Shown here in pieces: positions 572 through 11,579 of a stretch of DNA of 64,000 nt. Position 1 is the stretch's first letter; every line of letters starts with the position of its first letter. The notes below the pieces were generated by a model that had not been told where the DNA came from, ran no database searches, and worked only from the letters and a program-made list of their open reading frames with translations. Origin of the DNA: Salpingoeca rosetta. Its lineage: Eukaryota > Protista > Choanoflagellata. The DNA is taken from positions 1,688,178-1,752,177 of the forward strand of contig JAWQFM010000009.1 of NCBI GenBank assembly GCA_033442325.1, written 5' to 3'. Both the position numbers and the translations under genes were made by a program.

Positions 572-3500
572 ATGTCCGGCGGAGAGAAGAGAGCGAGGGA
601 GGAGGTGGAGGCCTTGCTGGCGCAGACGGAGTTGCTAGCGTTCTACGAGGGCGAGGAGCTCGAGGAGGGCATGGAGGTGGTGAGCGAGGATAGTGTGAAG
701 GACACGATCAGGGCCATCGCCAACAACACGTGTGGGGATTTTGAGAAGTGAGTACAACAAAACGGCACATTGCTGTGTTGGAAACAGCACGCACCCTGCA
801 TGCACTGCTCTCTGCTTACCTTGTTGCTGGGCTGTTCGTGTTGGGCAAGCCACAATCGCCATGGCCGTCGGTGACTTATTGCCTGCTTGTGTTGCTCTTG
901 GCACATGTTGAATGGCAGCTTGGATGAAATGGCCAACGGCGTCAGTGGGGCGCGTGCGGTGGCAGAGGCGCTCAAGGACAACACCTGCCTCAATACACTC
1001 TGGTTCGTCCTGTGGTGATTTGAGCTGCATCGTGTGGCATGTATGTAGTTCGGGTTGGGCTGCTTCATGCTGGTTGTTGGCCGACCTTTTCTCCTGTTTG
1101 TGTGCTCATGGCATGTGTTTTGACCGACCCCTTTCCGTGTTGACAGGCTGGGAGGCAATAATATCGGCGATGAGGGCGTTGCGGCGTTGGCAGAAATGCT
1201 GAAGCACAACACGACCATGACATCACTCAGGTGGGGGTGCACATATGCATGTGTGGATGGACATGGGCTGCGTCACGTTGCACTTTTATCCCGTGCTGTG
1301 TGCATGCAAGTGTGTGATTGGTGGTGTGGGTTCAACGACTGTGTTGCCACCCACAGTAATCATCACGCACTCACCCTCCCTCACCCATATGGCATCATCG
1401 CCCTGCGTGGCATCATCCCATCTTGACAGCCTGTGGCGCAATGACATCGGTCCTGAGGGCGCTGTTGCGTTGGCGGAGATGCTGAAGCACAACACGAACA
1501 TCGAAGAACTCAAGTGCGTGTAAACACATGCATATATGGATGTAAATGGGCTGCGCCACTGGCGTTGCACTTTTATCCCATGCTGTGAGTGCGAATGCAC
1601 ATGTGTGGTGGATGGATGAGTTCAATGGCTGTGTTGCCACCCACAGCAATCATCACGCACTCGCCCTTCCTCACTCTTGTGGCATCATTGCCCTGCGTGC
1701 CATCATCCCATCTGGACAGCCTGGCAGCCAACTCCATCGGCGGCGAAGGTGTTGTTGCGTTTGCGGAGATGCTGAAGCACAACACGGCTCTCAAAACATT
1801 GGAGTGAGTGGAAGAACCACTTTGGCAATGTGCCGTTGCATTGTTCCTGCATTCACCATGTACAAATCGAAGCACAGCCAACCAGCCAGCCATGCACGAC
1901 GTCTCTATCATGGGGGTTTGCGCAAAGAAATCATCCCCCCCCCTTAATTTCTTCTTTCACTGTGACATGCGTGCTGCCACACCTTGTGCCACTGGCATTG
2001 TCCCTTGTGCCTGTGCGACCATGACTGAAAGTCACATCATGTCACCCGAATGCAAGCTCACGTGTACGCAATCCATCCACGACCCACTTTCATCCATGCC
2101 ACTGACCCATTGTTCGCTCTCCCTTCACGGCTTCGTGTCCCATTCCCCTGTTCCATTCCCATTCCCACACACCTGCTTGCTACTGTCAGCCTGGGCGACA
2201 ACTCCATCACGCCAGTTGGCGGTACGGCGCTGGGAGCCGCCCTGGACCAGAACCGCACGCTGGAAGGGCTTGAGTGCGTCGATTGCGTTGCGCCTGCCTC
2301 ATGAACACCTGTGTCCTGTTGTGGGCAATGTGGTCCATCACCACTCTTTGTGTGCACGCCACAGCACACCATGTTCCTCCGCTTACCCTTGCATTTCTCC
2401 ACAACCACCCCCTCCCCCAAAACAACTCGTGCACACCATACTTGCTCCCTCCTCCTCAACCAACACACATCCACCACGTGTCCGCGTTCAGCATCAAGGG
2501 CAACTCCGCCGCCACCGCCCGCGCCTTTGGTGCCGCGCTGCCCGTCGACCGCGAGATCGGCACTATTTGGTCAGTCCACGTGTGTGCTTTCCCTTCCTGT
2601 CATGCGCTGTCTCTCTGCTCTTCTCCTCTCACGTGCTGCGTTCTACTTGCGTCCCATCTTATGTGTGGAACCACAGGTATGACGACAAAGAGGGCAAGGC
2701 CGCCTTCAACGAAGCGCGCAAGAAGAACAAGATCAGGGCCATCGCCAACAACACGTGTGGAGATGAAGTGCGGTGAGTGTAAGAACCCGATCCAACATGC
2801 TGAAACATACACGCTTGATGGGGAAAGAATAGCAGGACACGTGTGTTTGTGCATGTTTTTTTTTTTTTGCGTTTTTCTTTGCTTGTCCTTGTTTTTTTTT
2901 TTTTTTTGTGAGGAGCTTGGCTTTGTGTTTGGGTACGTGTGCGATCGCACAACTCGCACCACAAGAGTGTACCTGTGGTAGTTGTGGCTTACACCCTCGC
3001 GTTTGCACCCTCCTCATACGCTTGCTCATGACACAATTTGGAATTGCAGCCTGGTAGGAAATGACCTCGGCGACAGTGAGACGCGTGAGGTAGCCGAGGC
3101 GCTCAAGGACAACACGTGCCTCAAAGAGCTCATGTGCGTGGTGACGTGGATTGCACCGTGTGACATGCACAGTCGATTGGGTTGCTGTTGGTGCATGCTG
3201 CGCCCTGTTTCCCCTCCTTTCATTCATGCATTGCTTCTTGCGCGTGGTGTGTTTGCTCACCCTCGCTCCTGCTTTGCGTGTGCACAGCCTGGTACACAAT
3301 TCCATCAGCGACAAGGGTGCTGTGGCGTTGGCGAAGGTGCTGAAGCACAACAAGTCCCTCACGGAGCTCAAGTGAGTGTGAACACACGTGAATAAAGGCG
3401 CCCTCTGTGCTCGTGTGTGGCTTTGATGTGCAAGTTCAGTGGCTGCTTACCACCCATTGTGCTCGTCACCCACTCATGCCTGCTTTCCACTGCACATGCT

Positions 3501-6500
3501 GCCATCAACATCCCACTTCCTCCTCTCTTGTGTGTGCACAGCCTGCAGGGAAATTCTATCAGTGTTGAGGGCGCTGTGGCGTTGGCTGAGATGCTGAAGC
3601 ACAACACGACCATCACAGGCCTCAGGTGAGTGGGATCACACATACATTGAAAGCACCCTCTGTGCTCGTGTGTGGCTTTGATGTGCAAGTTCAGTGGCTG
3701 CTTACCACCCATTGTGCTCGTCATCCACTCATCATCCCTCCTCACCACCATGTGTGCTGTCATCAACCTTCCATTCCCCTCCTCTCTCTCTCTGTCTCTC
3801 TCGTGTGCACAGCCTGGAGAGCAACTCCATCAGCGACAAGGGTGCTGTGGCGTTGGCGAAGGTGCTGAAGCACAACACGACCCTCGAACGACTCAGGTGA
3901 GTGTGAACACCCCGTGAATTAAAGGCGCCCTCTGTGCTCGTGTGTGGCTTTGATGTGCAGGCCAATGGATGCTTACCACCCATTGTACTCGTCACCCACT
4001 CATGCCTGCTTTCCACTGCACATGCTGCCATCAACATCCCACTTCCTCCTCTCTTGTGTGTGCACAGCCTGCAGGGAAATTCTATCAGTGTTGAGGGCGC
4101 TGTGGCGTTGGCTGAGATGCTGAAGCACAACACGACAAGCACCAACACCGAACATCACCAGGACCTCTAGGTGGAGTGGGGATTGGGATCACACATACAT
4201 TGAAAGCACCCTCTGTGCTCGTGTGTGGCTTTGATGTGCAAGTTCAGTGGCTGTTTATCCATCATGTCCTCGTCACCCACACTGCATATGCTGTCATCAA
4301 CCTCCCACTTCCTCCTCTCTTGTGTGTGCACAGCCTGCAGGGCAATCCTATCAGTACTGAGGGCGCTGTGGCGTTGGCTGAGATGCTGAAGCACAACACG
4401 ACCCTAGAAGGACTTGGGTGAGTACACACACACATGCATTGCAGGCATCCTCTAAGCATGTGCTCGTGTGGTCTTGGTCGTGCATGTGCACTTATTCAGG
4501 CTCATTGGCTGTTTGGCGTCCCATGTACTCGTCATCCACTCATCGCTTCTCCTCTCCACCACATATGCTGCCATCACCCTCCTTCTCCCCTAATTACTCT
4601 TGTGTGCGCAGCCTGAACGACAACACCATCGGCGACAAGGGCGCCGTGGCCATGACAGAAATGCTGAAGCACAACAAGTCCCTCACGGCTCTCGTGTGAG
4701 TGCAGGCATGCACATGCATTGAAGGCACTCACTTTGAGCACGTATGCTTGTGTGATTTGCGAGTTTTGCAGTGTAGCAGGCTCACTGGCTGCTGGCCATC
4801 CACTCATCACCCCTCATCACCACCACCATGTGCGCTGTCATCAACCTCCACCCTGTCCCTCCTGTCTTGTGTGTGCACAGCCTGGAGAGCAACTCCATCG
4901 GCGACCAGGTCGCTGTGGCGTTGGCGGAGGTGCTGAAGCAGAACATGACTCTCCAATATCTTTTGTAAGAGGAAACCCTCCCCTCGTTGACAATTCGCGA
5001 TGTGCAAATCGAGGCACTGCCAGCCATGCACCATGTCTCTGCTCTGTGCTTGTTTTGCCACAAGTGCTTCCATCTTTCACTGTGACATGCGTGCTGCCAC
5101 ACCTTGTGCCACTGGCATTGTCCCTTGTGCCTGTGCGACCATGACTGAAAGTCACATCATGTCACCCGAATGCAAGCTCACGTGTACGCAATCCATCCAC
5201 GACCCACTTTCATCCATGCCACTGACCCATTGTTCGCTCTCCCTTCACGGCTTCGTGTCCCATTCCCCTGTTCCATTCCCATTCCCACACACCTGCTTGC
5301 TACTGTCAGCCTGGGCGACAACTCCATCACGCCAGTTGGCGGTACGGCGCTGGGAGCCGCCCTGGACCAGAACCGCACGCTGGAAGGGCTTGAGTGCGTC
5401 GATTGCGTTGCGCCTGCCTCATGAACACCTGTGTCCTGTTGTGGGCAATGTGGTCCATCACCACTCTTTGTGTGCACGCCACAGCACACCATGTTCCTCC
5501 GCTTACCCTTGCATTTCTCCACAACCACCCCCTCCCCCAAAACAACTCGTGCACACCATACTTGCTCCCTCCTCCTCAACCAACACACATCCACCACGTG
5601 TCCGCGTTCAGCATCAAGGGCAACTCCGCCGCCACCGCCCGCGCCTTTGGTGCCGCGCTGCCCGTCGACCGCGAGATCGGCACTATTTGGTCAGTCCACG
5701 TGTGTGCTTTCCCTTCCTGTCATGCGCTGTCTCTCTGCTCTGAACTCTTCTCCTCTCACGTGCTGCGTTCTACTTGCGTCCCATCTTATGTGTGGAATCA
5801 CAGGGAAGATGCCTCTGAGCGCAACGCCTTCAACAAAGCGTGCGAGGAGAGGAAGCAACACGAGACCACGCACACCGACCAAGAAGACCAGCAACAGGAC
5901 GCGCCTGCGACCAATGAGCAGCAACAGCACGAGCGCCTGCTCAGTGCCTGCAAGGCCGGCAATGTCGCAGCCGTCACCTCCCTCATCATCCGGCACAATA
6001 CAGACGTCAACCAACAAGATAAACAGGTGCGTGCATGTGTGTGCTTGTGCTTGTGAAGCGGATGGCTCACTCGTGCAGCGAGCTGTGTGTATGTTGCCAT
6101 GACTCTCACCACTTGCCCTCTTTCCCACTCCCACTGTCCATCATCCAACCACAGGGCGACACGCCGCTGCACGTTGCCTGCAGGCAGAACCAATCCGCCG
6201 TCGTGGAGCTGCTCCTGAAGAAGGGCGCAGACACCTCCATCAAAAACAAACAGGTGATTTCTCTGACACTTGCGCTTGTGCTTGTACTTATGGTCGTGCG
6301 TCCGCTGATCCACAGCTTCTCCCCTGTCTGTCTTCGTGTTCCCATCTCCCAAACTTGCTGCCCATTCACGCACATGACATGCAAATGCGCTTTCGTCGTC
6401 CTTTGTAGGGGGAGACACCTCACGATGTAGCCAAAGCCAGCGGCCACACCGCCATCACCACCGCCATCGAGGGCCTCAACCCAGGCAGCGAGAAGCAGCA

Positions 6501-7782
6501 GCAACAGGGAACCACTGCTGCTTCGGACGAAACAGACGCAGAGCAGGTACGTGCAGACGAAACACATTGTCCTTTGTCATGCCGCACCACTTCAGGCATT
6601 TGTTCCTGTGAACCTCTTGCAACACACGTCCGAATTAATGTCTTGCGCGCCGCCATCATACACCATCATCCATTCATTCCCCGCCAACGCCAACCACCAT
6701 CAACGCTCTTCCCTGTTGACATTTTTTCTGTGTGAACCCGTTTTGATGTACACAGGTGCACAGGGAGGCGGTGCAGGCGCGCATGATGGACATTGCAGAG
6801 CGTTCCGACACGCACATGGCGGGGAGAGCCAAGATGGGAGTATCTGGCCAGGGCCGCGCGGGCAAGACGACGCTTATGGACTCGCTTCAGGGCAAGCCGT
6901 TCAACAAGCAGCAGCACTCCACACTCGGCGCCACCACCAACGACATGAGAGTCACCGTCCACACCATGGAAGTGTGCGACTGGAAGGTTCGTTTAGTTGC
7001 CTGTGTGTGTGCGTGTGTGTGTGTGCGTGTGTGTTGTCTGTTGGTGTGTGTGTGCGTGTGTGTGTGTGTGTGTTGTCTGTCGGTGTGTGTGTGTGTGTAT
7101 GTGTGTGTGTGATATGTGCATCCACCTTGTACCAACACCTGCTTCCACCATCATTCGATCAATCACCACCTTATGTCTTTGTTCACCAACACTCACAAAC
7201 ACCCACCCTTCCACATCTCGTGCAGGAGAGCGACCAGAGCACGTCCGAGTTCATCCGCAGTCTCGTTGGCACGGCGATGGCACGCGAGGCCGGCGTGGAC
7301 GAGGAGCTGAAGCGCGCGTCAGCAAAGGCACGGGCGCAGCACGCCACCCGTGTTACCGAGCAACAGCACGAGGAGGCCAAGAAGCAGGCCAAGAAGCAGG
7401 CCAGGACGGATGCCAAGAAGCAGCGCAAGAAGAGCCATGGCACATCCACAACTTCCACCCCCTCATCCGACAAGGCGTCCACCGCAGCCGTGCCTGCACC
7501 TGCTGCAGGTCGTGATGCCTCCACAGCAACGCCTGCAGCAAAGGAGCAGCACCCAGCTTCCAGCCACGCCGACGTTGGTGACGACGATGCTGACGTCGTT
7601 GCCGTGACCACCCCATCCGTTTCGAAGGAGGAGGTGGAGAAGGCAATCAAGGACATGGACTTTGATGCGACAATTGGCGAAGGCAAGATGCAGGTCTCCT
7701 TCAAGATCTTCGACCTGGGCGGCCAGTCCACCTTCTACGTCTTTCACCCTTTCTTCCTCACCAAGCGAGTCACTGTGTTTGT

Positions 7783-7841
<59 letters not shown>

Positions 7842-10025
7842 TGTGTGTGCGTGTGTGTGTGTGTGCGCGCGCGCTGTGGGCTACGTGCTGTCAACACCCC
7901 CCCCCCCCCCACCACCACCCTTCTCACATCCCCACCCTTTACCTCCCAACCTCCCCACAACAGGTACGCAGTGTACCTGCTTGTGTTCTCCATGGAAGGA
8001 CCTGCTGCACCAAAATGAGAGCAAGCGGACCGAGGCGGGGGAGTTTTATGGAGCACTGGCTCCTCCTCCCTCCACCTCCATGGAAAAGGGGCGCCCGTCC
8101 TCATCGTCCGCACCTTCGCTGAGGTGTCAGTCCGCGGAAACAACATGGAGAAATCTTGCGTGAATTCCCAGGCGCCTGCGCCCCAAACACGGCCTTCGCT
8201 NNNNNNNNNNNNNNNNNNNNNNNNNNNNNNNNNNNNNNNNNNNNNNNNNNNNNNNNNNNNNNNNNNNNNNNNNNNNNNNNNNNNNNNNNNNNNNNNNNNN
8301 NNNNNNNNNNNNNNNNNNNNNNNNNNNNNNNNNNNNNNNNNNNNNNNNNNNNNNNNNNNNNNNNNNNNNNNNNNNNNNNNNNNNNNNNNNNNNNNNNNNN
8401 NNNNNNNNNNNNNNNNNNNNNNNNNNNNNNNNNNNNNNNNNNNNNNNNNNNNNNNNNNNNNNNNNNNNNNNNNNNNNNNNNNNNNNNNNNNNNNNNNNNN
8501 NNNNNNNNNNNNNNNNNNNNNNNNNNNNNNNNNNNNNNNNNNNNNNNNNNNNNNNNNNNNNNNNNNNNNNNNNNNNNNNNNNNNNNNNNNNNNNNNNNNN
8601 NNNNNNNNNNNNNNNNNNNNNNNNNNNNNNNNNNNNNNNNNNNNNNNNNNNNNNNNNNNNNNNNNNNNNNNNNNNNNNNNNNNNNNNNNNNNNNNNNNNN
8701 NNNNNNNNNNNNNNNNNNNNNNNNNNNNNNNNNNNNNNNNNNNNNNNNNNNNNNNNNNNNNNNNNNNNNNNNNNNNNNNNNNNNNNNNNNNNNNNNNNNN
8801 NNNNNNNNNNNNNNNNNNNNNNNNNNNNNNNNNNNNNNNNNNNNNNNNNNNNNNNNNNNNNNNNNNNNNNNNNNNNNNNNNNNNNNNNNNNNNNNNNNNN
8901 NNNNNNNNNNNNNNNNNNNNNNNNNNNNNNNNNNNNNNNNNNNNNNNNNNNNNNNNNNNNNNNNNNNNNNNNNNNNNNNNNNNNNNNNNNNNNNNNNNNN
9001 NNNNNNNNNNNNNNNNNNNNNNTGAGGAGAAGACGGCGTATGTCACCTTTCGCCTGAAGCAGTTCAAGACAGAGGCGAGCGTGCGTGTTGAAGACGCACA
9101 GCATGCGTCTTTCCTGCCAGAGGGCCTGTTTACGGTGGTGTTAGCGCATGTGATGACGCATGCACAGCACGGCGCATCGCAGCAGCCCAAGCTGAGTCGC
9201 ACCCACGCCATCTGCTTCATGGAGTCGACCAAGCTTGAGTTGCAGCTTGTGCCCGCCCGCGCCAACTCCGGCCACGGTGACAACGATGCGAGCCAGAGCA
9301 AAGGCAACAGTCCAGAGCACCAGCAGCACCAGCAGTACCTGGTTCCAGCCATCCTGCCGATGACGATCCGCCACAGCAGCAGCACGATGGAATCTGTCAC
9401 TCTGAGCACGACGGCAGCACAGCAGGTCAACCCATATCTTGGGTTTGAGGAGAAGACGGCGTATGTCACCTTTCGCCTGAAGCAGTTCAAGACAGAGGCG
9501 AGCGTGCGTGTTGAAGACGCACAGCATGCGTCTTTCCTGCCAGAGGGCCTGTTTACGGTGGTGTTAGCGCATGTGATGACGCATGCACAGCACGGCGCAT
9601 CACAGCAGCCCAAGCTGAGCCGCACCCACGCCGTCTGCTTCATGGAGTCGACCAAACTGGAGTTGCAGCTTGTGCCGGCTGTTGGCGGCATCAAGATGAA
9701 GATCAGGAGTGCACAGCCACGCGCCATGCTACACATGCTGCACACCATGATCAGCGAGGCTGCCAGAGAGCGCTATCCTGAGCTGAAGAGCAGCCTCCTG
9801 CTGCCGTATGACGACAAGACGCTGCTGTTCTTTGAGGATGTGCTGCACCACCACAAGAGCAAGCAGGACATGTGGGTAGACGAACAGCTGCTGCCGCCCG
9901 ATGACCTTGTCGCCAAGTATGGCCGTCTCTTGCCCGTTCTCGGCCTGCAGGACAAGTATGACGTCTTCATCAGCTACCGGTGAGACTTGTGTGTGTGTGT
10001 GTGTGCATGCGTGTGTGAGTATGTG

Positions 10026-10058
<33 letters not shown>

Positions 10059-11163
10059 ACGCGCGTATGTGCATGCGTGCGTGCGTGCGTGCGTGCGTGC
10101 GTGTATGTGTGTGTGTGCAAGTATGTGTCTGTCACTTCCACCAACTCGCCACAACTAATGCATGCAGTTTACCGTTATCTCATCACGACCTTTTCAACCC
10201 CCCCCCCTCCCGCAACCACAACAGGCAACGCGCCAGCAGTGGGCTGGTGATGGCGCTGCACCCGCGCTTGGAGCAGCGCAACCTGGTTGCGTTCCTGGAC
10301 GCCAACAACCTGGAGACGGGCCTCAACTTCAAGCTGTCGTTCATGACGGCGATTGGGCTGAGCCTGGTGGCCTGCCCCATTGTTTCTGCTGCCACCATCA
10401 TGCAGATGAGGCAGCTGCAGCACAGCGACTACTGCGACAACGTGCTGCTGGAGTGGATGACGATGCTGGCGCTGCACGAGCACCAGCGCAAGCACGGAGG
10501 GAGAGGTGAGGGGGAGGCCACAGACCTGATCCGCCTTCGCCGCGTTGTGCCCGTGATTGTTGGCAGCGCGTGGCACAATGTGAACGACAGCAGTATGAGC
10601 AGGGCCGAGATGAGCGAGTACGATTCGTTTGATGCCATGAAGCGGCTGGCCATGACGCTGCCAGATGCTGTGAGCAAGCAAACAGCAGCAGCCCTCGATC
10701 AGTATTTCACACAGGTGCTGCACCTGCCGCCACCCCGCCCACACAAGAGCGTGCGCGAAGCAGTGTGGTCGCTGTTTGACATTGACGCCGTGACTGCATT
10801 GGATGCCGGTGTGGACCGCACGTCACAGTTGCGCGACATTGCGGAGAAAGTGCGCCGGGTCGTCGTCTCTGCCAGGAGCGAGGAGCAAACTGGACGGGGG
10901 CCAGCAACTGCTCGTCGATCCACTCAGGTACATTGTGTGCAAGTGTGTGTGTGTGTGTTGGTGTGTGTGTAGGTCTGTGTGCATGTGTTGTGCTTGTGTG
11001 TGTGTGTGTGTGTGTACATTAAAATCATCTTGGTGCGCCTTGCCACATTGCGCCTCACACTGGATCTTCGTCAATTGTTCTTGCTTGCAGTTCTCCCAGC
11101 CGATCCAGCCGTCTGAACCAGCCGCACCACAGCCACCACAAGCGCCCCAGTCACCCTCACCTC

Positions 11164-11202
<39 letters not shown>

Positions 11203-11579
11203 GTGTGCCCATGTGATGGAGTGCCTTGTGCAACGTTATAGGCTTGTGCTTACACCCTTGCTCCTCTGTCCTCTTGCACGCAAACACACACGCGCACAAC
11301 AAGCAGGAAGCTGGCATCGTGTTTGATGCGGAGTTTGAGGAGTGGCTGTCGACCAACAAGCTGCTGCCACACGTGCAAGGCGCACTGCACCAAGTTGGGG
11401 CCGCAGACTTTGATATGCTGACCGTGCTTGTGGACACGGGCGTGGTTGGTGCCGACAAGCTACAGGAAATGGGTGTTCGTGCTGGCCCTGCACACCTGTT
11501 CATGCAGCGCTTTGACGAGCATCGTGCAGCAGCCGATGTCCAGAACAAGGAGGGCGGTGGCTGCTGTGCCCTCATGTGA
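572..11579 (+). CDS. Multi-exon LRR-ankyrin-Roc-COR-TIR-SAM protein with C-terminal CaaX box (ROCO/TIR family)
   Basis: Exon 1 is 572-747. 84-nt LRR exons start at 919, 1147, 1430, 1720, 2190, 3050, 3288, 3542, 3813, (4068 damaged), 4334, 4612, 4881 and 5310. Cap/linker exons are 2492-2569, 2677-2772 and 5612-5689. Ankyrin exons are 5804-6026, 6155-6253 (GDTPLHVAC..., exactly 33 codons) and 6409-6546. The Roc domain has P-loop GQGRAGKTT and switch I HSTLG (6756-6986), and G3 [18 protein letters not shown] (7226-7764). COR ([15 protein letters not shown]) lies after the gap, to 9979. TIR begins KYDVFISYR|QRASSG...[10 protein letters not shown] (10225-10927). A Pro-rich exon is 11091-11165. The last exon 11307-11579 is SAM-like and ends GGGCCALM*. 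Confidence 0.85.
919..5393 (+). repeat. Array of 13 intact plus 1 damaged 84-nt (28-aa) RI/NLRC3-type LRR exons with repeated flanking introns
   Basis: Each exon runs ag|(C)CTG.....AAY...GCG TTG GCN GAG ATG CTG AAG CAC AAC ACG...CTC NN|gt. All are phase 2-2, with consensus [28 protein letters not shown]. Confidence 0.95.
1953..2677 (+). repeat. Copy 1 of a near-identical ~725-bp segmental duplication (copy 2 at 5073-5804)
   Basis: Base-for-base match at offset 3120, including introns, except a 7-nt insertion (TGAACTC) at about 5741 and a substitution near the 3' end. Confidence 0.95.
5073..5804 (+). repeat. Copy 2 of the ~725-bp duplication (last LRR exon plus C-cap exon)
   Basis: Matches 1953-2677. 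The ORF track lists identical peptides at 2050 and 5170, and at 2058 and 5178. Confidence 0.95.
8201..9022. other. Assembly gap (822 N) inside the Roc-COR coding region
   Basis: Run of n. The ~200 nt before it contain apparent single-base insertions typical of a low-quality read end. Confidence 0.99.
9023..9680 (+). repeat. In-frame tandem duplication (423-nt/141-aa period) in the COR domain
   Basis: 9023-9257 matches 9446-9680. [14 protein letters not shown]...LELQLVPA occurs twice in one frame. Confidence 0.9.

What the first reader, a model, noticed from the sequence alone, without database searches (positions are those of the whole stretch)
572..11579. LRR-ANK-Roc-COR-TIR-SAM-CaaX: candidate all-in-one immune sensor/effector
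Seen: one spliced reading frame joins two LRR solenoids, 2-3 ankyrin repeats, a Roc GTPase, COR, a TIR, a SAM-like domain and a prenylation box. No kinase is present. Known: Roc-COR is a nucleotide-regulated dimerisation switch, TIR domains activate on oligomerisation, and SAM plus TIR drive SARM1 NADase activity. Inference: this is an NLR-like architecture (sensor, switch, effector) that uses Roc-COR in place of NACHT/NB-ARC, is tethered to a membrane, and sits in a probable unicellular relative of animals.
Basis: partly seen in the sequence, partly recalled or inferred. Interest (0 to 1): 0.85.

Follow-up and report, generated by a model that had tools for sequence, protein, structure and literature searches.

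The report
Choanoflagellate LRR-Roc-COR-TIR receptor-like gene
This is one copy of a roughly 35-member Salpingoeca rosetta gene family that joins a leucine-rich-repeat sensor, a Roc-COR GTPase switch and a TIR enzyme domain in one protein, but this copy is interrupted by an assembly gap and the family's architecture has already been published.

Summary
The domain calls hold. Splicing 22 exons (572-7764) gives a clean 916-aa frame: cap, two RI-type LRR solenoids joined by a hybrid exon, three ankyrin repeats and a Roc GTPase. Four exons (9255-11579) give a clean 591-aa frame: COR-B, TIR, SAM and CALM-stop.

The frame is not continuous in the assembly. The 237 nt before the gap carry five 1-nt indels relative to a paralogue. 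The first 231 nt after the gap are a 97% duplicate that reads do not support. COR-A is unseen. In the paralogue PTSG_10437 the whole Roc-end/COR-A/COR-B/TIR-start stretch is a single 1581-nt exon, so the gap most likely lies inside one exon of one gene.

The organism is the choanoflagellate Salpingoeca rosetta. About 35 annotated paralogues share the architecture. The TIR of one, F2UPN6, was shown in a 2026 preprint to make cADPR through a glutamate that this copy retains.

Roc-COR-TIR proteins are also reported in Aplysia, Chondrus and prokaryotes. This is a new member of a known kind, distinguished by a double LRR block and a CaaX tail. Copy-specific expression is unproven. The scan had already noted two paralogues on other pieces of this genome (s1-432458, s1-431373).

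The parts
572..747 (+). Exon 1: start codon and N-terminal cap ending [13 protein letters not shown]
   Evidence: ATG at 572 and GTGAGT donor at 748. It is the first exon of the clean 916-aa splice model.
919..2569 (+). LRR solenoid 1: 84-nt cassettes at 919, 1147, 1430, 1720 and 2190, plus a 78-nt C-cap exon at 2492-2569
   Evidence: Splice sites and frame were checked. Single exons hit LRR_6.
2677..2772 (+). Hybrid exon. Its 5' half is homologous to the post-LRR linker exon (5804-5850) and its 3' half to the end of exon 1 (697-739).
   Evidence: blastn gives 1953-2726 = 5073-5850 at 97% and 697-739 = 2722-2764 at 93%. The exon is in frame.
3050..5689 (+). LRR solenoid 2: 84-nt cassettes at 3050, 3288, 3542, 3813, 4334, 4612, 4881 and 5310, plus a 78-nt C-cap exon at 5612-5689
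4068..4171 (+). Dead LRR cassette: the donor site is lost and there is an in-frame stop. It is presumably skipped.
   Evidence: Sequence. There is no GT at the 84-nt position and a TAG at 4168-4170.
5804..6546 (+). Acidic/Q-rich linker and three ankyrin repeats (exons 5804-6026, 6155-6253, 6409-6546)
   Evidence: Pfam Ank E 4.8e-8 on 6161-6262. The region aligns with paralogue ankyrin regions. RNA depth was 0 over 5840-6039 in both RNA runs.
6756..6986 (+). Roc exon a, with P-loop GQGRAGKT at 6846-6869
   Evidence: Pfam Roc E 2.5e-5. The 6986->7226 joint is seen in 73 RNA reads, which may be of paralogue origin.
7226..7764 (+). Roc exon b: a roughly 150-aa K/A/S/T-rich insert, then DLGGQ (7712-7726). 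A GC-AG intron follows.
7964..8200 (+). Left part of the large Roc-COR exon ([11 protein letters not shown]...). It carries three +1 and two -1 indels relative to the paralogue.
   Evidence: DNA alignment to L001. Reads lack the bases at 8044 and 8062. At 7996 only one contig lacks the base and 0 of 18 RNA reads do.
8201..9022 (.). Assembly gap. It should hold the end of Roc and COR-A, about 200 aa or roughly 600 nt.
   Evidence: Paralogue P0045 residues about 656-890 have no counterpart in the window. The paralogue exon is 1581 nt and continuous.
9023..9253 (+). Assembly artefact: a duplicate of 9446-9679
   Evidence: 97% direct repeat. 65 RNA reads plus DNA contigs carry a different sequence before 9254, which reads PKLVDSRRAL in frame, the end of COR-A in the paralogues.
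9254..9979 (+). COR-B (YLVPAILP at 9336-9359) and the first TIR strand YDVFISY (9957-9977)
   Evidence: Pfam COR-B E 9e-4. 86% identity to PTSG_11903 over this stretch.
10225..10927 (+). TIR exon. The catalytic-type Glu lies at 10451-10453 within DNVLLEW.
   Evidence: AF2 pLDDT 87. VIA Z 13.6 to RPV1/RUN1 TIR and about 11 to SARM1. Glu is present in 52 of 54 family members and aligns with E1118 of F2UPN6.
11091..11165 (+). 25-aa P/Q-rich linker exon
   Evidence: Splice sites. The same exon exists in PTSG_10437.
11307..11579 (+). SAM domain, then GGGCCALM and the stop codon (CaaX at 11565-11576)
   Evidence: AF2 pLDDT 88.6. SAM domains fill the top of the VIA-wide list at Z 5.5-7.2. SAM_2 is found in 18 of 26 homologous tails. 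The CaaX is shared with PTSG_10437 and PTSG_12865.

Best explanation
This is a single S. rosetta gene of about 1,800 codons. Its order is N-cap, LRR solenoid 1, hybrid cap, LRR solenoid 2, three ankyrin repeats, Roc GTPase, COR-A (hidden in the gap), COR-B, TIR, SAM and a CaaX box.

Shown here:
- The domain identities and their order.
- Collinearity with intact paralogues.
- Retention of the TIR glutamate.
- A paralogue's TIR makes cADPR (published, not tested here).

Inferred mechanism:
1. The NLRC3-like LRRs and ankyrin repeats hold the protein inactive until a ligand or a modified partner binds.
2. Binding changes the nucleotide and dimer state of Roc-COR.
3. The SAM domain and the farnesylated tail concentrate the TIR domains on a membrane, so that they pair and convert NAD+ into cADPR.
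4. cADPR acts as a diffusible signal, rather than the enzyme killing the cell by NAD+ depletion.

The breaks in the assembly around the gap are most likely low-quality contig ends, not a dead gene.
For: - Clean 916-aa and 591-aa splice models.
- Paralogue P0045 is collinear with both flanks of the gap.
- In PTSG_10437 the region from YAVYLL through COR-A and COR-B to YDVFISYR is one 1581-nt exon.
- Reads extend 9254 upstream into PKLVDSRRAL, in frame, matching the end of COR-A.
- Pfam on paralogues gives LRR_6, Ank, Roc, COR-A, COR-B and TIR_2.
- TIR fold Z 13.6 and SAM fold with SAM_2 in 18 of 26 tails.
- The Glu of DNVLLEW is conserved in 52 of 54 members and equals E1118 of F2UPN6, whose TIR made cADPR in a Glu-dependent way.
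- All five indels lie in the last 237 nt before the gap, while about 4.5 kb of other coding sequence has none.
- A CaaX box recurs in PTSG_10437, PTSG_12865, PTSG_11865 and an S. infusionum homologue.
Against: - Continuity across the gap is inferred from paralogues. It is not seen for this copy.
- At 7996 the RNA reads keep the frameshifting base (0 of 18 drop it).
- At 30 of 40 listed variant sites the reads carry the PTSG_10437 base. At several sites unique to this copy no read carries the window's base, for example 0 of 246 at 7413. Expression of this copy is therefore unproven.
- RNA depth is 0 over the first ankyrin exon.
- The G4 region reads RTFAE here against GTFAD in the paralogues.
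- No ligand, GTPase activity, prenylation or immune phenotype has been tested.
- Joints for four predicted introns were not reported. They abut masked (TG)n repeats.
Confidence: 0.6

Rival explanations
1. This copy is a pseudogene. The five indels before the gap are real, the Roc-COR exon is broken, and the RNA reads that map here come from near-identical expressed paralogues.
For: - There are five frameshifts in 237 nt relative to PTSG_10437.
- RNA reads keep the extra base at 7996 (0 of 18 drop it).
- 30 of 40 variant sites in reads carry the paralogue base, and the window's own base is absent at 7413, 7424 and 7612 in X41.
- There is a dead LRR cassette at 4068.
- The G4 motif is altered.
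Against: - The remaining roughly 4.5 kb of coding sequence has no stop or frameshift and has intact splice sites.
- The indels cluster at a contig end, at short homopolymers.
- Reads and contigs drop the bases at 8044 and 8062.
- Minor fractions of reads carry the window's base at 7711, 9261, 9431 and 9959.
Confidence: 0.15
2. The protein is intact but is not an immune receptor. It would be a signalling GTPase that couples an environmental or bacterial cue to cADPR/Ca2+-type second-messenger signalling, for example in the choanoflagellate's developmental responses.
For: - The paralogue TIR makes cADPR and is not listed among the NAD+ depleters.
- Roco proteins in Dictyostelium and animals act in cytoskeletal and trafficking signalling (PMC3128523, PMC6337361).
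- No defence phenotype is known.
Against: - The family is expanded to about 35 copies and has swapped C-terminal enzyme domains, namely TIR, PARP and PNP_UDP_1.
- It shows cassette-wise LRR variation.
- Its LRRs are most similar to those of NACHT NLRs.
- This pattern is typical of conflict systems (PMC8195603).
Confidence: 0.2
3. There are two separate genes: an LRR-Ank-Roc gene ending in the gap and a COR-TIR-SAM gene starting in it.
For: The gap hides the junction, and no read or contig was shown to bridge it.
Against: - Roc without COR, or COR-B without Roc and COR-A, occurs in none of the intact family models examined.
- The paralogue encodes this stretch in one exon.
- Reads run from 9254 upstream into COR-A in frame.
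Confidence: 0.03
4. The first LRR solenoid (572-2772) is a relic of an upstream tandem copy or an assembly join. It would not be part of the mature protein, which would then have a single solenoid like its paralogues.
For: - All recovered paralogue models have at most one cap motif.
- The hybrid exon marks a recombination junction.
- No reads were laid on 572-5639.
Against: - The hybrid exon keeps the phase and has consensus splice sites, and the frame stays open through it.
- The two copies are 97% identical with 10 gaps, not identical, which argues against a simple assembly duplication.
Confidence: 0.15

Closest known systems
S. rosetta paralogues, especially PTSG_10437 (F-series UniProt, 1345 aa), PTSG_13152 and PTSG_12359 (F2UPN6)
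   Same: - Same exon structure at the 3' end and the same Ank-Roc-COR-TIR-SAM order.
- 85% identity over the last 591 aa to PTSG_10437, including GGGCCALM.
- The F2UPN6 TIR was shown to make cADPR through the glutamate retained here.
   Different: - The window copy has two capped LRR solenoids, about 14 cassettes, where paralogue models show one cap and 2-6 recognisable cassettes.
- Most paralogues lack the CaaX box.
- This copy is interrupted by a gap.
Prokaryotic LRR-AP-GTPase(Roc)-COR-effector conflict systems (Kaur et al. 2021, PMC8195603)
   Same: N-terminal fast-evolving LRRs, a Roc-COR switch and a variable C-terminal effector position. They were explicitly compared with NLRs.
   Different: The gene here is eukaryotic and intron-rich, has ankyrin repeats, and has a SAM-CaaX tail after the effector.
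Brown-alga LRR-ROCO genes (PMC3341825, PMC11378527)
   Same: One LRR per phase-2 exon cassette, with exon shuffling, proposed as a candidate immune receptor repertoire.
   Different: The brown-alga proteins are plain LRR-ROCO with no effector. No close sequence relationship was found.
Animal and red-alga Roc-COR-TIR proteins (Aplysia 'ROCO TLRs/MyD88-like', PMC9334734; Chondrus TPR-ROCO-TIR, PMC11378527)
   Same: Roc-COR and TIR lie in one polypeptide.
   Different: Their accessory domains differ (MBT, EF-hand, Death, TPR). Orthology was not tested, and none appeared among the 32 COR-B hits.
SARM1
   Same: A SAM plus a catalytic TIR with the conserved glutamate. TIR model Z is about 11 and SAM model Z 5.5-6.4 to SARM1 chains.
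   Different: The domain order is reversed and there is one SAM, not two. There is no ARM domain, and the regulator is a GTPase. The paralogue's product is cADPR, with no NAD+ depletion reported.
Human MFHAS1/MASL1 and LRRK1/2
   Same: LRR (and ankyrin) repeats followed by Roc-COR.
   Different: There is no kinase domain, and a TIR-SAM tail takes its place. UniProt's automatic name 'non-specific serine/threonine protein kinase' for the family is not borne out by Pfam.

Membership tests
ROCO (Roc-COR) proteins | Roc GTPase domain with P-loop and DxxGQ | tested here: met
   Pfam Roc E 2.5e-5 on the first Roc exon alone; at 24.9 bits this partial piece is under the 27-bit cut-off. GQGRAGKT and DLGGQ were located. 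The region is more than 90% identical to paralogues whose whole Roc scores 1e-15 to 1e-18. The G4 region lies in the damaged stretch.
ROCO (Roc-COR) proteins | COR-A directly after Roc | not testable with these tools
   COR-A lies in the N gap at 8201-9022. It is present in every intact paralogue at E 1e-14 to 1e-18. A 30-nt read overhang before 9254 encodes the paralogue COR-A end PKLVDSRRAL.
ROCO (Roc-COR) proteins | COR-B | tested here: inconclusive
   Pfam COR-B E 9e-4, 19.5 bits against a 27-bit cut-off. The same weak score is seen in intact paralogues. The YLVPAILP motif is present.
TIR domain (catalytic class) | TIR fold | tested here: met
   AF2 pLDDT 87. The first 29 VIA rows are all TIR domains at Z 9.5-13.6, and the best non-TIR row is Z 7.7. 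A family profile hits Roq1, L6 and SARM1 TIR sequences. Pfam TIR_2 on the exon alone scores only E 0.096.
TIR domain (catalytic class) | Conserved catalytic glutamate | tested here: met
   The Glu at 10451-10453 aligns without gaps to E1118 of F2UPN6, the residue listed as catalytic in the preprint's table.
TIR domain (catalytic class) | NAD+ cleavage or cADPR production | not testable with these tools
   Shown only for the paralogue F2UPN6, which is 62-65% identical over the TIR exon, in bioRxiv 10.64898/2026.04.20.719644.
SAM domain | Five-helix SAM fold or profile match | tested here: met
   AF2 pLDDT 88.6 with five helices. Nearly all of the top 35 VIA-wide rows are SAM domains, at a modest Z of 5.5-7.2. 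SAM_2 is found in 18 of 26 homologous tails, best E 2.7e-6, but not in the window's own tail. Foldseek was not significant.
CaaX-prenylated proteins | C-terminal Cys-aliphatic-aliphatic-X directly before the stop codon | tested here: met
   CALM plus TGA at 11565-11579. An adjacent Cys lies upstream. The motif recurs in four relatives. Actual prenylation was not tested.
NLR / STAND receptors | NACHT or NB-ARC ATPase | tested here: not met
   No NACHT or NB-ARC hit was found in the window pieces or in any paralogue. The gene resembles NLRs only in layout and in LRR type.
LRRK/DAPK-type Roco kinases | Protein kinase domain | tested here: not met
   No Pkinase hit was found in the window pieces or the paralogues.

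The most novel reading that the evidence does not exclude
Choanoflagellates run a large, diversifying receptor repertoire that is built like NLRs but is switched by a Roc-COR GTPase. In this reading the LRR cassettes are recombined between copies, as in the double-solenoid fusion seen here. A subset of receptors is farnesyl-anchored, so that ligand-triggered TIR pairing on a membrane emits cADPR as an alarm signal. That would be an innate-immune logic in the closest relatives of animals that was later lost or replaced in most animals.
Probability: 0.3. Interest if true: 0.75.

Novelty: new member of a known kind. Interest (0 to 1): 0.45.

Why it matters
The family sits in the closest living relatives of animals. 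It combines three modules that are central to immunity elsewhere: NLRC3-type LRRs, a nucleotide switch and an enzymatic TIR. If it senses microbes, it would show that TIR signalling gated by a GTPase, rather than by a STAND ATPase, existed near the root of animals. S. rosetta would then be a genetically tractable system in which to study it.

For this locus itself the practical value is smaller:
- It documents a mis-assembled stretch of the reference, with a gap, a spurious duplicate and five indels.
- It records a recombinant double-LRR variant.
- It identifies a CaaX-bearing subgroup of the family.

Tried and rejected
- **The window's own gene model.** I looked for it in the protein collection three ways. 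No row was marked as encoded by the window, so my exon model could not be compared with the depositor's.
- **Pfam on single window pieces.** This gave only weak COR-B and TIR_2 scores and no SAM hit. Paralogue scans and folds were needed.
- **Foldseek on the SAM model.** Not significant, E 1.3. The PDB sequence profile search on the tail found nothing.
- **Read evidence.** I first took the three 'left out' bases and the 6986->7226 joint as proof for this copy. I withdrew that after finding that 30 of 40 read variants equal the PTSG_10437 base. The reads show expression of the family, not of this copy.
- **Loose-end sequences at 5671, 6756 and 9254.** None is found anywhere in the window. The first two are probably of paralogue origin.
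- **Other family members in the window.** None found.
- **The 1953-2726 / 5073-5850 repeat as an assembly duplicate.** Rejected, because the copies differ by 3% and 10 gaps.
- **A real in-frame 141-aa COR-B duplication (423-nt period).** Rejected, because reads and contigs contradict the 9253/9254 junction.
Full report
**What is in the sequence**

The region is GC-rich, intron-rich eukaryotic DNA, with (TG)n runs just inside many introns. On the + strand I could chain 22 exons from the ATG at 572 to 7764.
- Every acceptor is AG. Every donor is GT, except a GC donor at 7765.
- The spliced frame is 916 codons with no stop.
- It encodes a 58-aa cap ending [13 protein letters not shown] and five 84-nt LRR cassettes plus a 78-nt C-cap.
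- A 96-nt hybrid exon (2677-2772) follows, then eight more 84-nt cassettes plus a second C-cap.
- Next come an acidic linker and three ankyrin repeats.
- The Roc domain follows, up to DLGGQ, with a roughly 150-aa low-complexity insert that the paralogues share.
- A further cassette at 4068 has lost its donor and carries an in-frame stop, so it is presumably skipped.
- Single LRR exons hit Pfam LRR_6 in 7 of 10 cases. The ankyrin exon scores 4.8e-8 and the P-loop exon hits Roc at 2.5e-5.

**The gap, tested first**

The letters on the two sides are not continuous as assembled.
- Left flank (7964-8200). This stretch encodes [11 protein letters not shown]...APVLIV..., but only by hopping between frames. 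Against the DNA of paralogue PTSG_10437 it has three 1-nt insertions and two 1-nt deletions in 237 nt.
- Right flank. 9023-9253 is a 97% copy of 9446-9679. At 9254, 65 RNA reads and several DNA contigs carry a different upstream sequence. Joined to the window, that sequence reads PKLVDSRRAL|[11 protein letters not shown] in the frame of the downstream ORF. This is exactly the COR-A end of the paralogues. The duplicate is therefore an assembly artefact, and the open frame continues leftwards into COR-A.
- Collinearity. Paralogue P0045 is collinear with both flanks and has about 234 residues with no counterpart in the window.
- Exon structure. In PTSG_10437 the entire stretch from YAVYLL to YDVFISYR is one uninterrupted 1581-nt exon. 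The window shows 237 + 726 nt of that exon, so about 600 nt, covering the end of Roc and COR-A, are missing.
- Conclusion. A single gene is by far the likeliest reading, but I did not see a molecule of this copy bridging the gap.

**The 3' half**

Exons 9255-9979, 10225-10927, 11091-11165 and 11307-11579 give 591 codons with no stop. They are 85% identical end to end to PTSG_10437, which has the same exon structure.
- TIR. The TIR exon folds with pLDDT 87. The first 29 structural matches are all TIR domains, with Z 13.6 to RPV1/RUN1 and about 11 to SARM1. The best non-TIR match is Z 7.7.
- SAM. The last 90 residues fold as five helices with pLDDT 88.6. SAM domains fill the top of an all-against-all PDB scan, at a modest Z of 5.5-7.2. 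18 of 26 homologous tails hit Pfam SAM_2, although the window's own tail does not.
- CaaX. The protein ends GGGCCALM followed by the stop codon. A CaaX box also ends PTSG_10437 (CALM), PTSG_12865 (CLLM), PTSG_11865 (CVIA) and an S. infusionum homologue (CTIC). Most paralogues lack it.

**Whose gene it is**

The COR-B piece finds only 32 proteins at E<1e-3 among 1.8 billion representatives.
- The best hits are Salpingoeca rosetta proteins. Others come from the choanoflagellates Barroeca monosierra, Hartaetosiga balthica, Salpingoeca infusionum and Mylnosiga fluctuans, and from environmental sequences.
- Across I count about 35 annotated S. rosetta proteins with Roc-COR of this type.
- Most have the order LRR_6-Ank-Roc-COR-A-COR-B-TIR_2-SAM.
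- Variants carry PNP_UDP_1 (PTSG_02681) or PARP (PTSG_12997, PTSG_08728) in place of, or beside, the TIR.
- The LRRs are most similar to those of NACHT NLRs of the NLRC3 type.

**Expression**

The two raw RNA runs are stranded and put the RNA on the + strand. Most laid reads are only 95-99% identical to the window.
- At 30 of 40 listed variant sites the reads carry the base of PTSG_10437.
- At several sites unique to this copy no read carries the window's base.
- The first ankyrin exon has zero depth.
- The reads, including the 6986->7226 joint, therefore show that the family is transcribed. They do not show that this copy is.
- The joints of four predicted introns were not reported. Their donors abut (TG)n runs that the tool masks, so this is inconclusive.

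**What is known already**

- A 2026 preprint (bioRxiv 10.64898/2026.04.20.719644) tested the TIR of F2UPN6 (1352 aa, PTSG_12359, residues 1034-1255). It found Glu-dependent cADPR production in E. coli.
- Its figure legend lists LRR, Roc and COR among the architectures shown. S. rosetta is not among the NAD+-depleting exceptions it names.
- The window's TIR aligns without gaps around DNVLLEW and keeps that glutamate.
- Roc-COR-TIR proteins are also described in Aplysia (PMC9334734) and Chondrus (PMC11378527).
- LRR-Roc-COR-effector proteins were framed as NLR analogues in prokaryotes (PMC8195603).
- One-LRR-per-exon ROCO repertoires were proposed as immune receptors in brown algae (PMC3341825).
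- I found no paper that analyses the choanoflagellate family as such.

**Most likely mechanism (inference)**

1. The LRR and ankyrin region senses a ligand.
2. The Roc-COR nucleotide and dimer state changes.
3. The SAM domain and the farnesyl anchor concentrate the TIR domains on a membrane.
4. The paired TIR domains make cADPR as a signal.

The SARM1 comparison is only partial. The domain order is reversed, there is one SAM rather than two, and NAD+ depletion was not reported for the paralogue.

**Special to this copy**

- The double LRR block. The hybrid exon's 5' half matches the post-LRR linker exon and its 3' half matches the end of exon 1. This is the footprint of recombination between two tandem units. 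No recovered paralogue model has two caps.
- The CaaX tail, shared with only a few relatives.

**Verdict**

The integrity and expression of this copy are open.

Noticed in passing
P0002 (PTSG_02681), P0064 (PTSG_12997), P0123 (PTSG_08728): Family members carry other NAD- or nucleoside-directed enzyme domains at the C-terminus: PNP_UDP_1 phosphorylase at 1270-1492 of P0002, and a PARP catalytic domain in P0064 and P0123. The effector position therefore appears to be swappable.
   Followed up: partly
P0001, P0003, P0040-P0059 (database names): UniProt's automatic name for many family members is 'non-specific serine/threonine protein kinase'. Pfam finds no kinase domain in any member scanned, so this is probably a rule-based misnaming from Roc-COR.
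   Followed up: partly
window 7765-7963: This is a GC-AG intron with donor GCGAGT. It is the only placement that reproduces the paralogue sequence FFLTK|YAVYLL.
   Followed up: yes
window 6996-7119, 7768-7882, 9983-10126, 10930-11015, 11166-11205: Long (TG)n/(TGCG)n microsatellites sit immediately after the donor sites of several introns of this gene. They also hampered read-joint detection.
   Followed up: no
window 6693-6744: A genomic contig of run X1 replaces 50 nt of this intron with 9 other letters (TGCCCCCGC). This is either an indel polymorphism or a reference error.
   Followed up: no
window 3437-3616 vs 3963-4142: Two LRR cassette-plus-intron units are 97% identical. This suggests recent conversion or duplication inside solenoid 2. 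The second unit is the dead cassette.
   Followed up: partly
ARAGORN with default settings reports no tRNA anywhere in the window.
   Followed up: no
P0087 (PTSG_13176), P0043 (PTSG_05418): Related LRR-Ank modules are joined to other partners: a TNFR-Cys domain in P0087, and an N-terminal G6PD_N segment in P0043. The latter may be a gene-model fusion.
   Followed up: no
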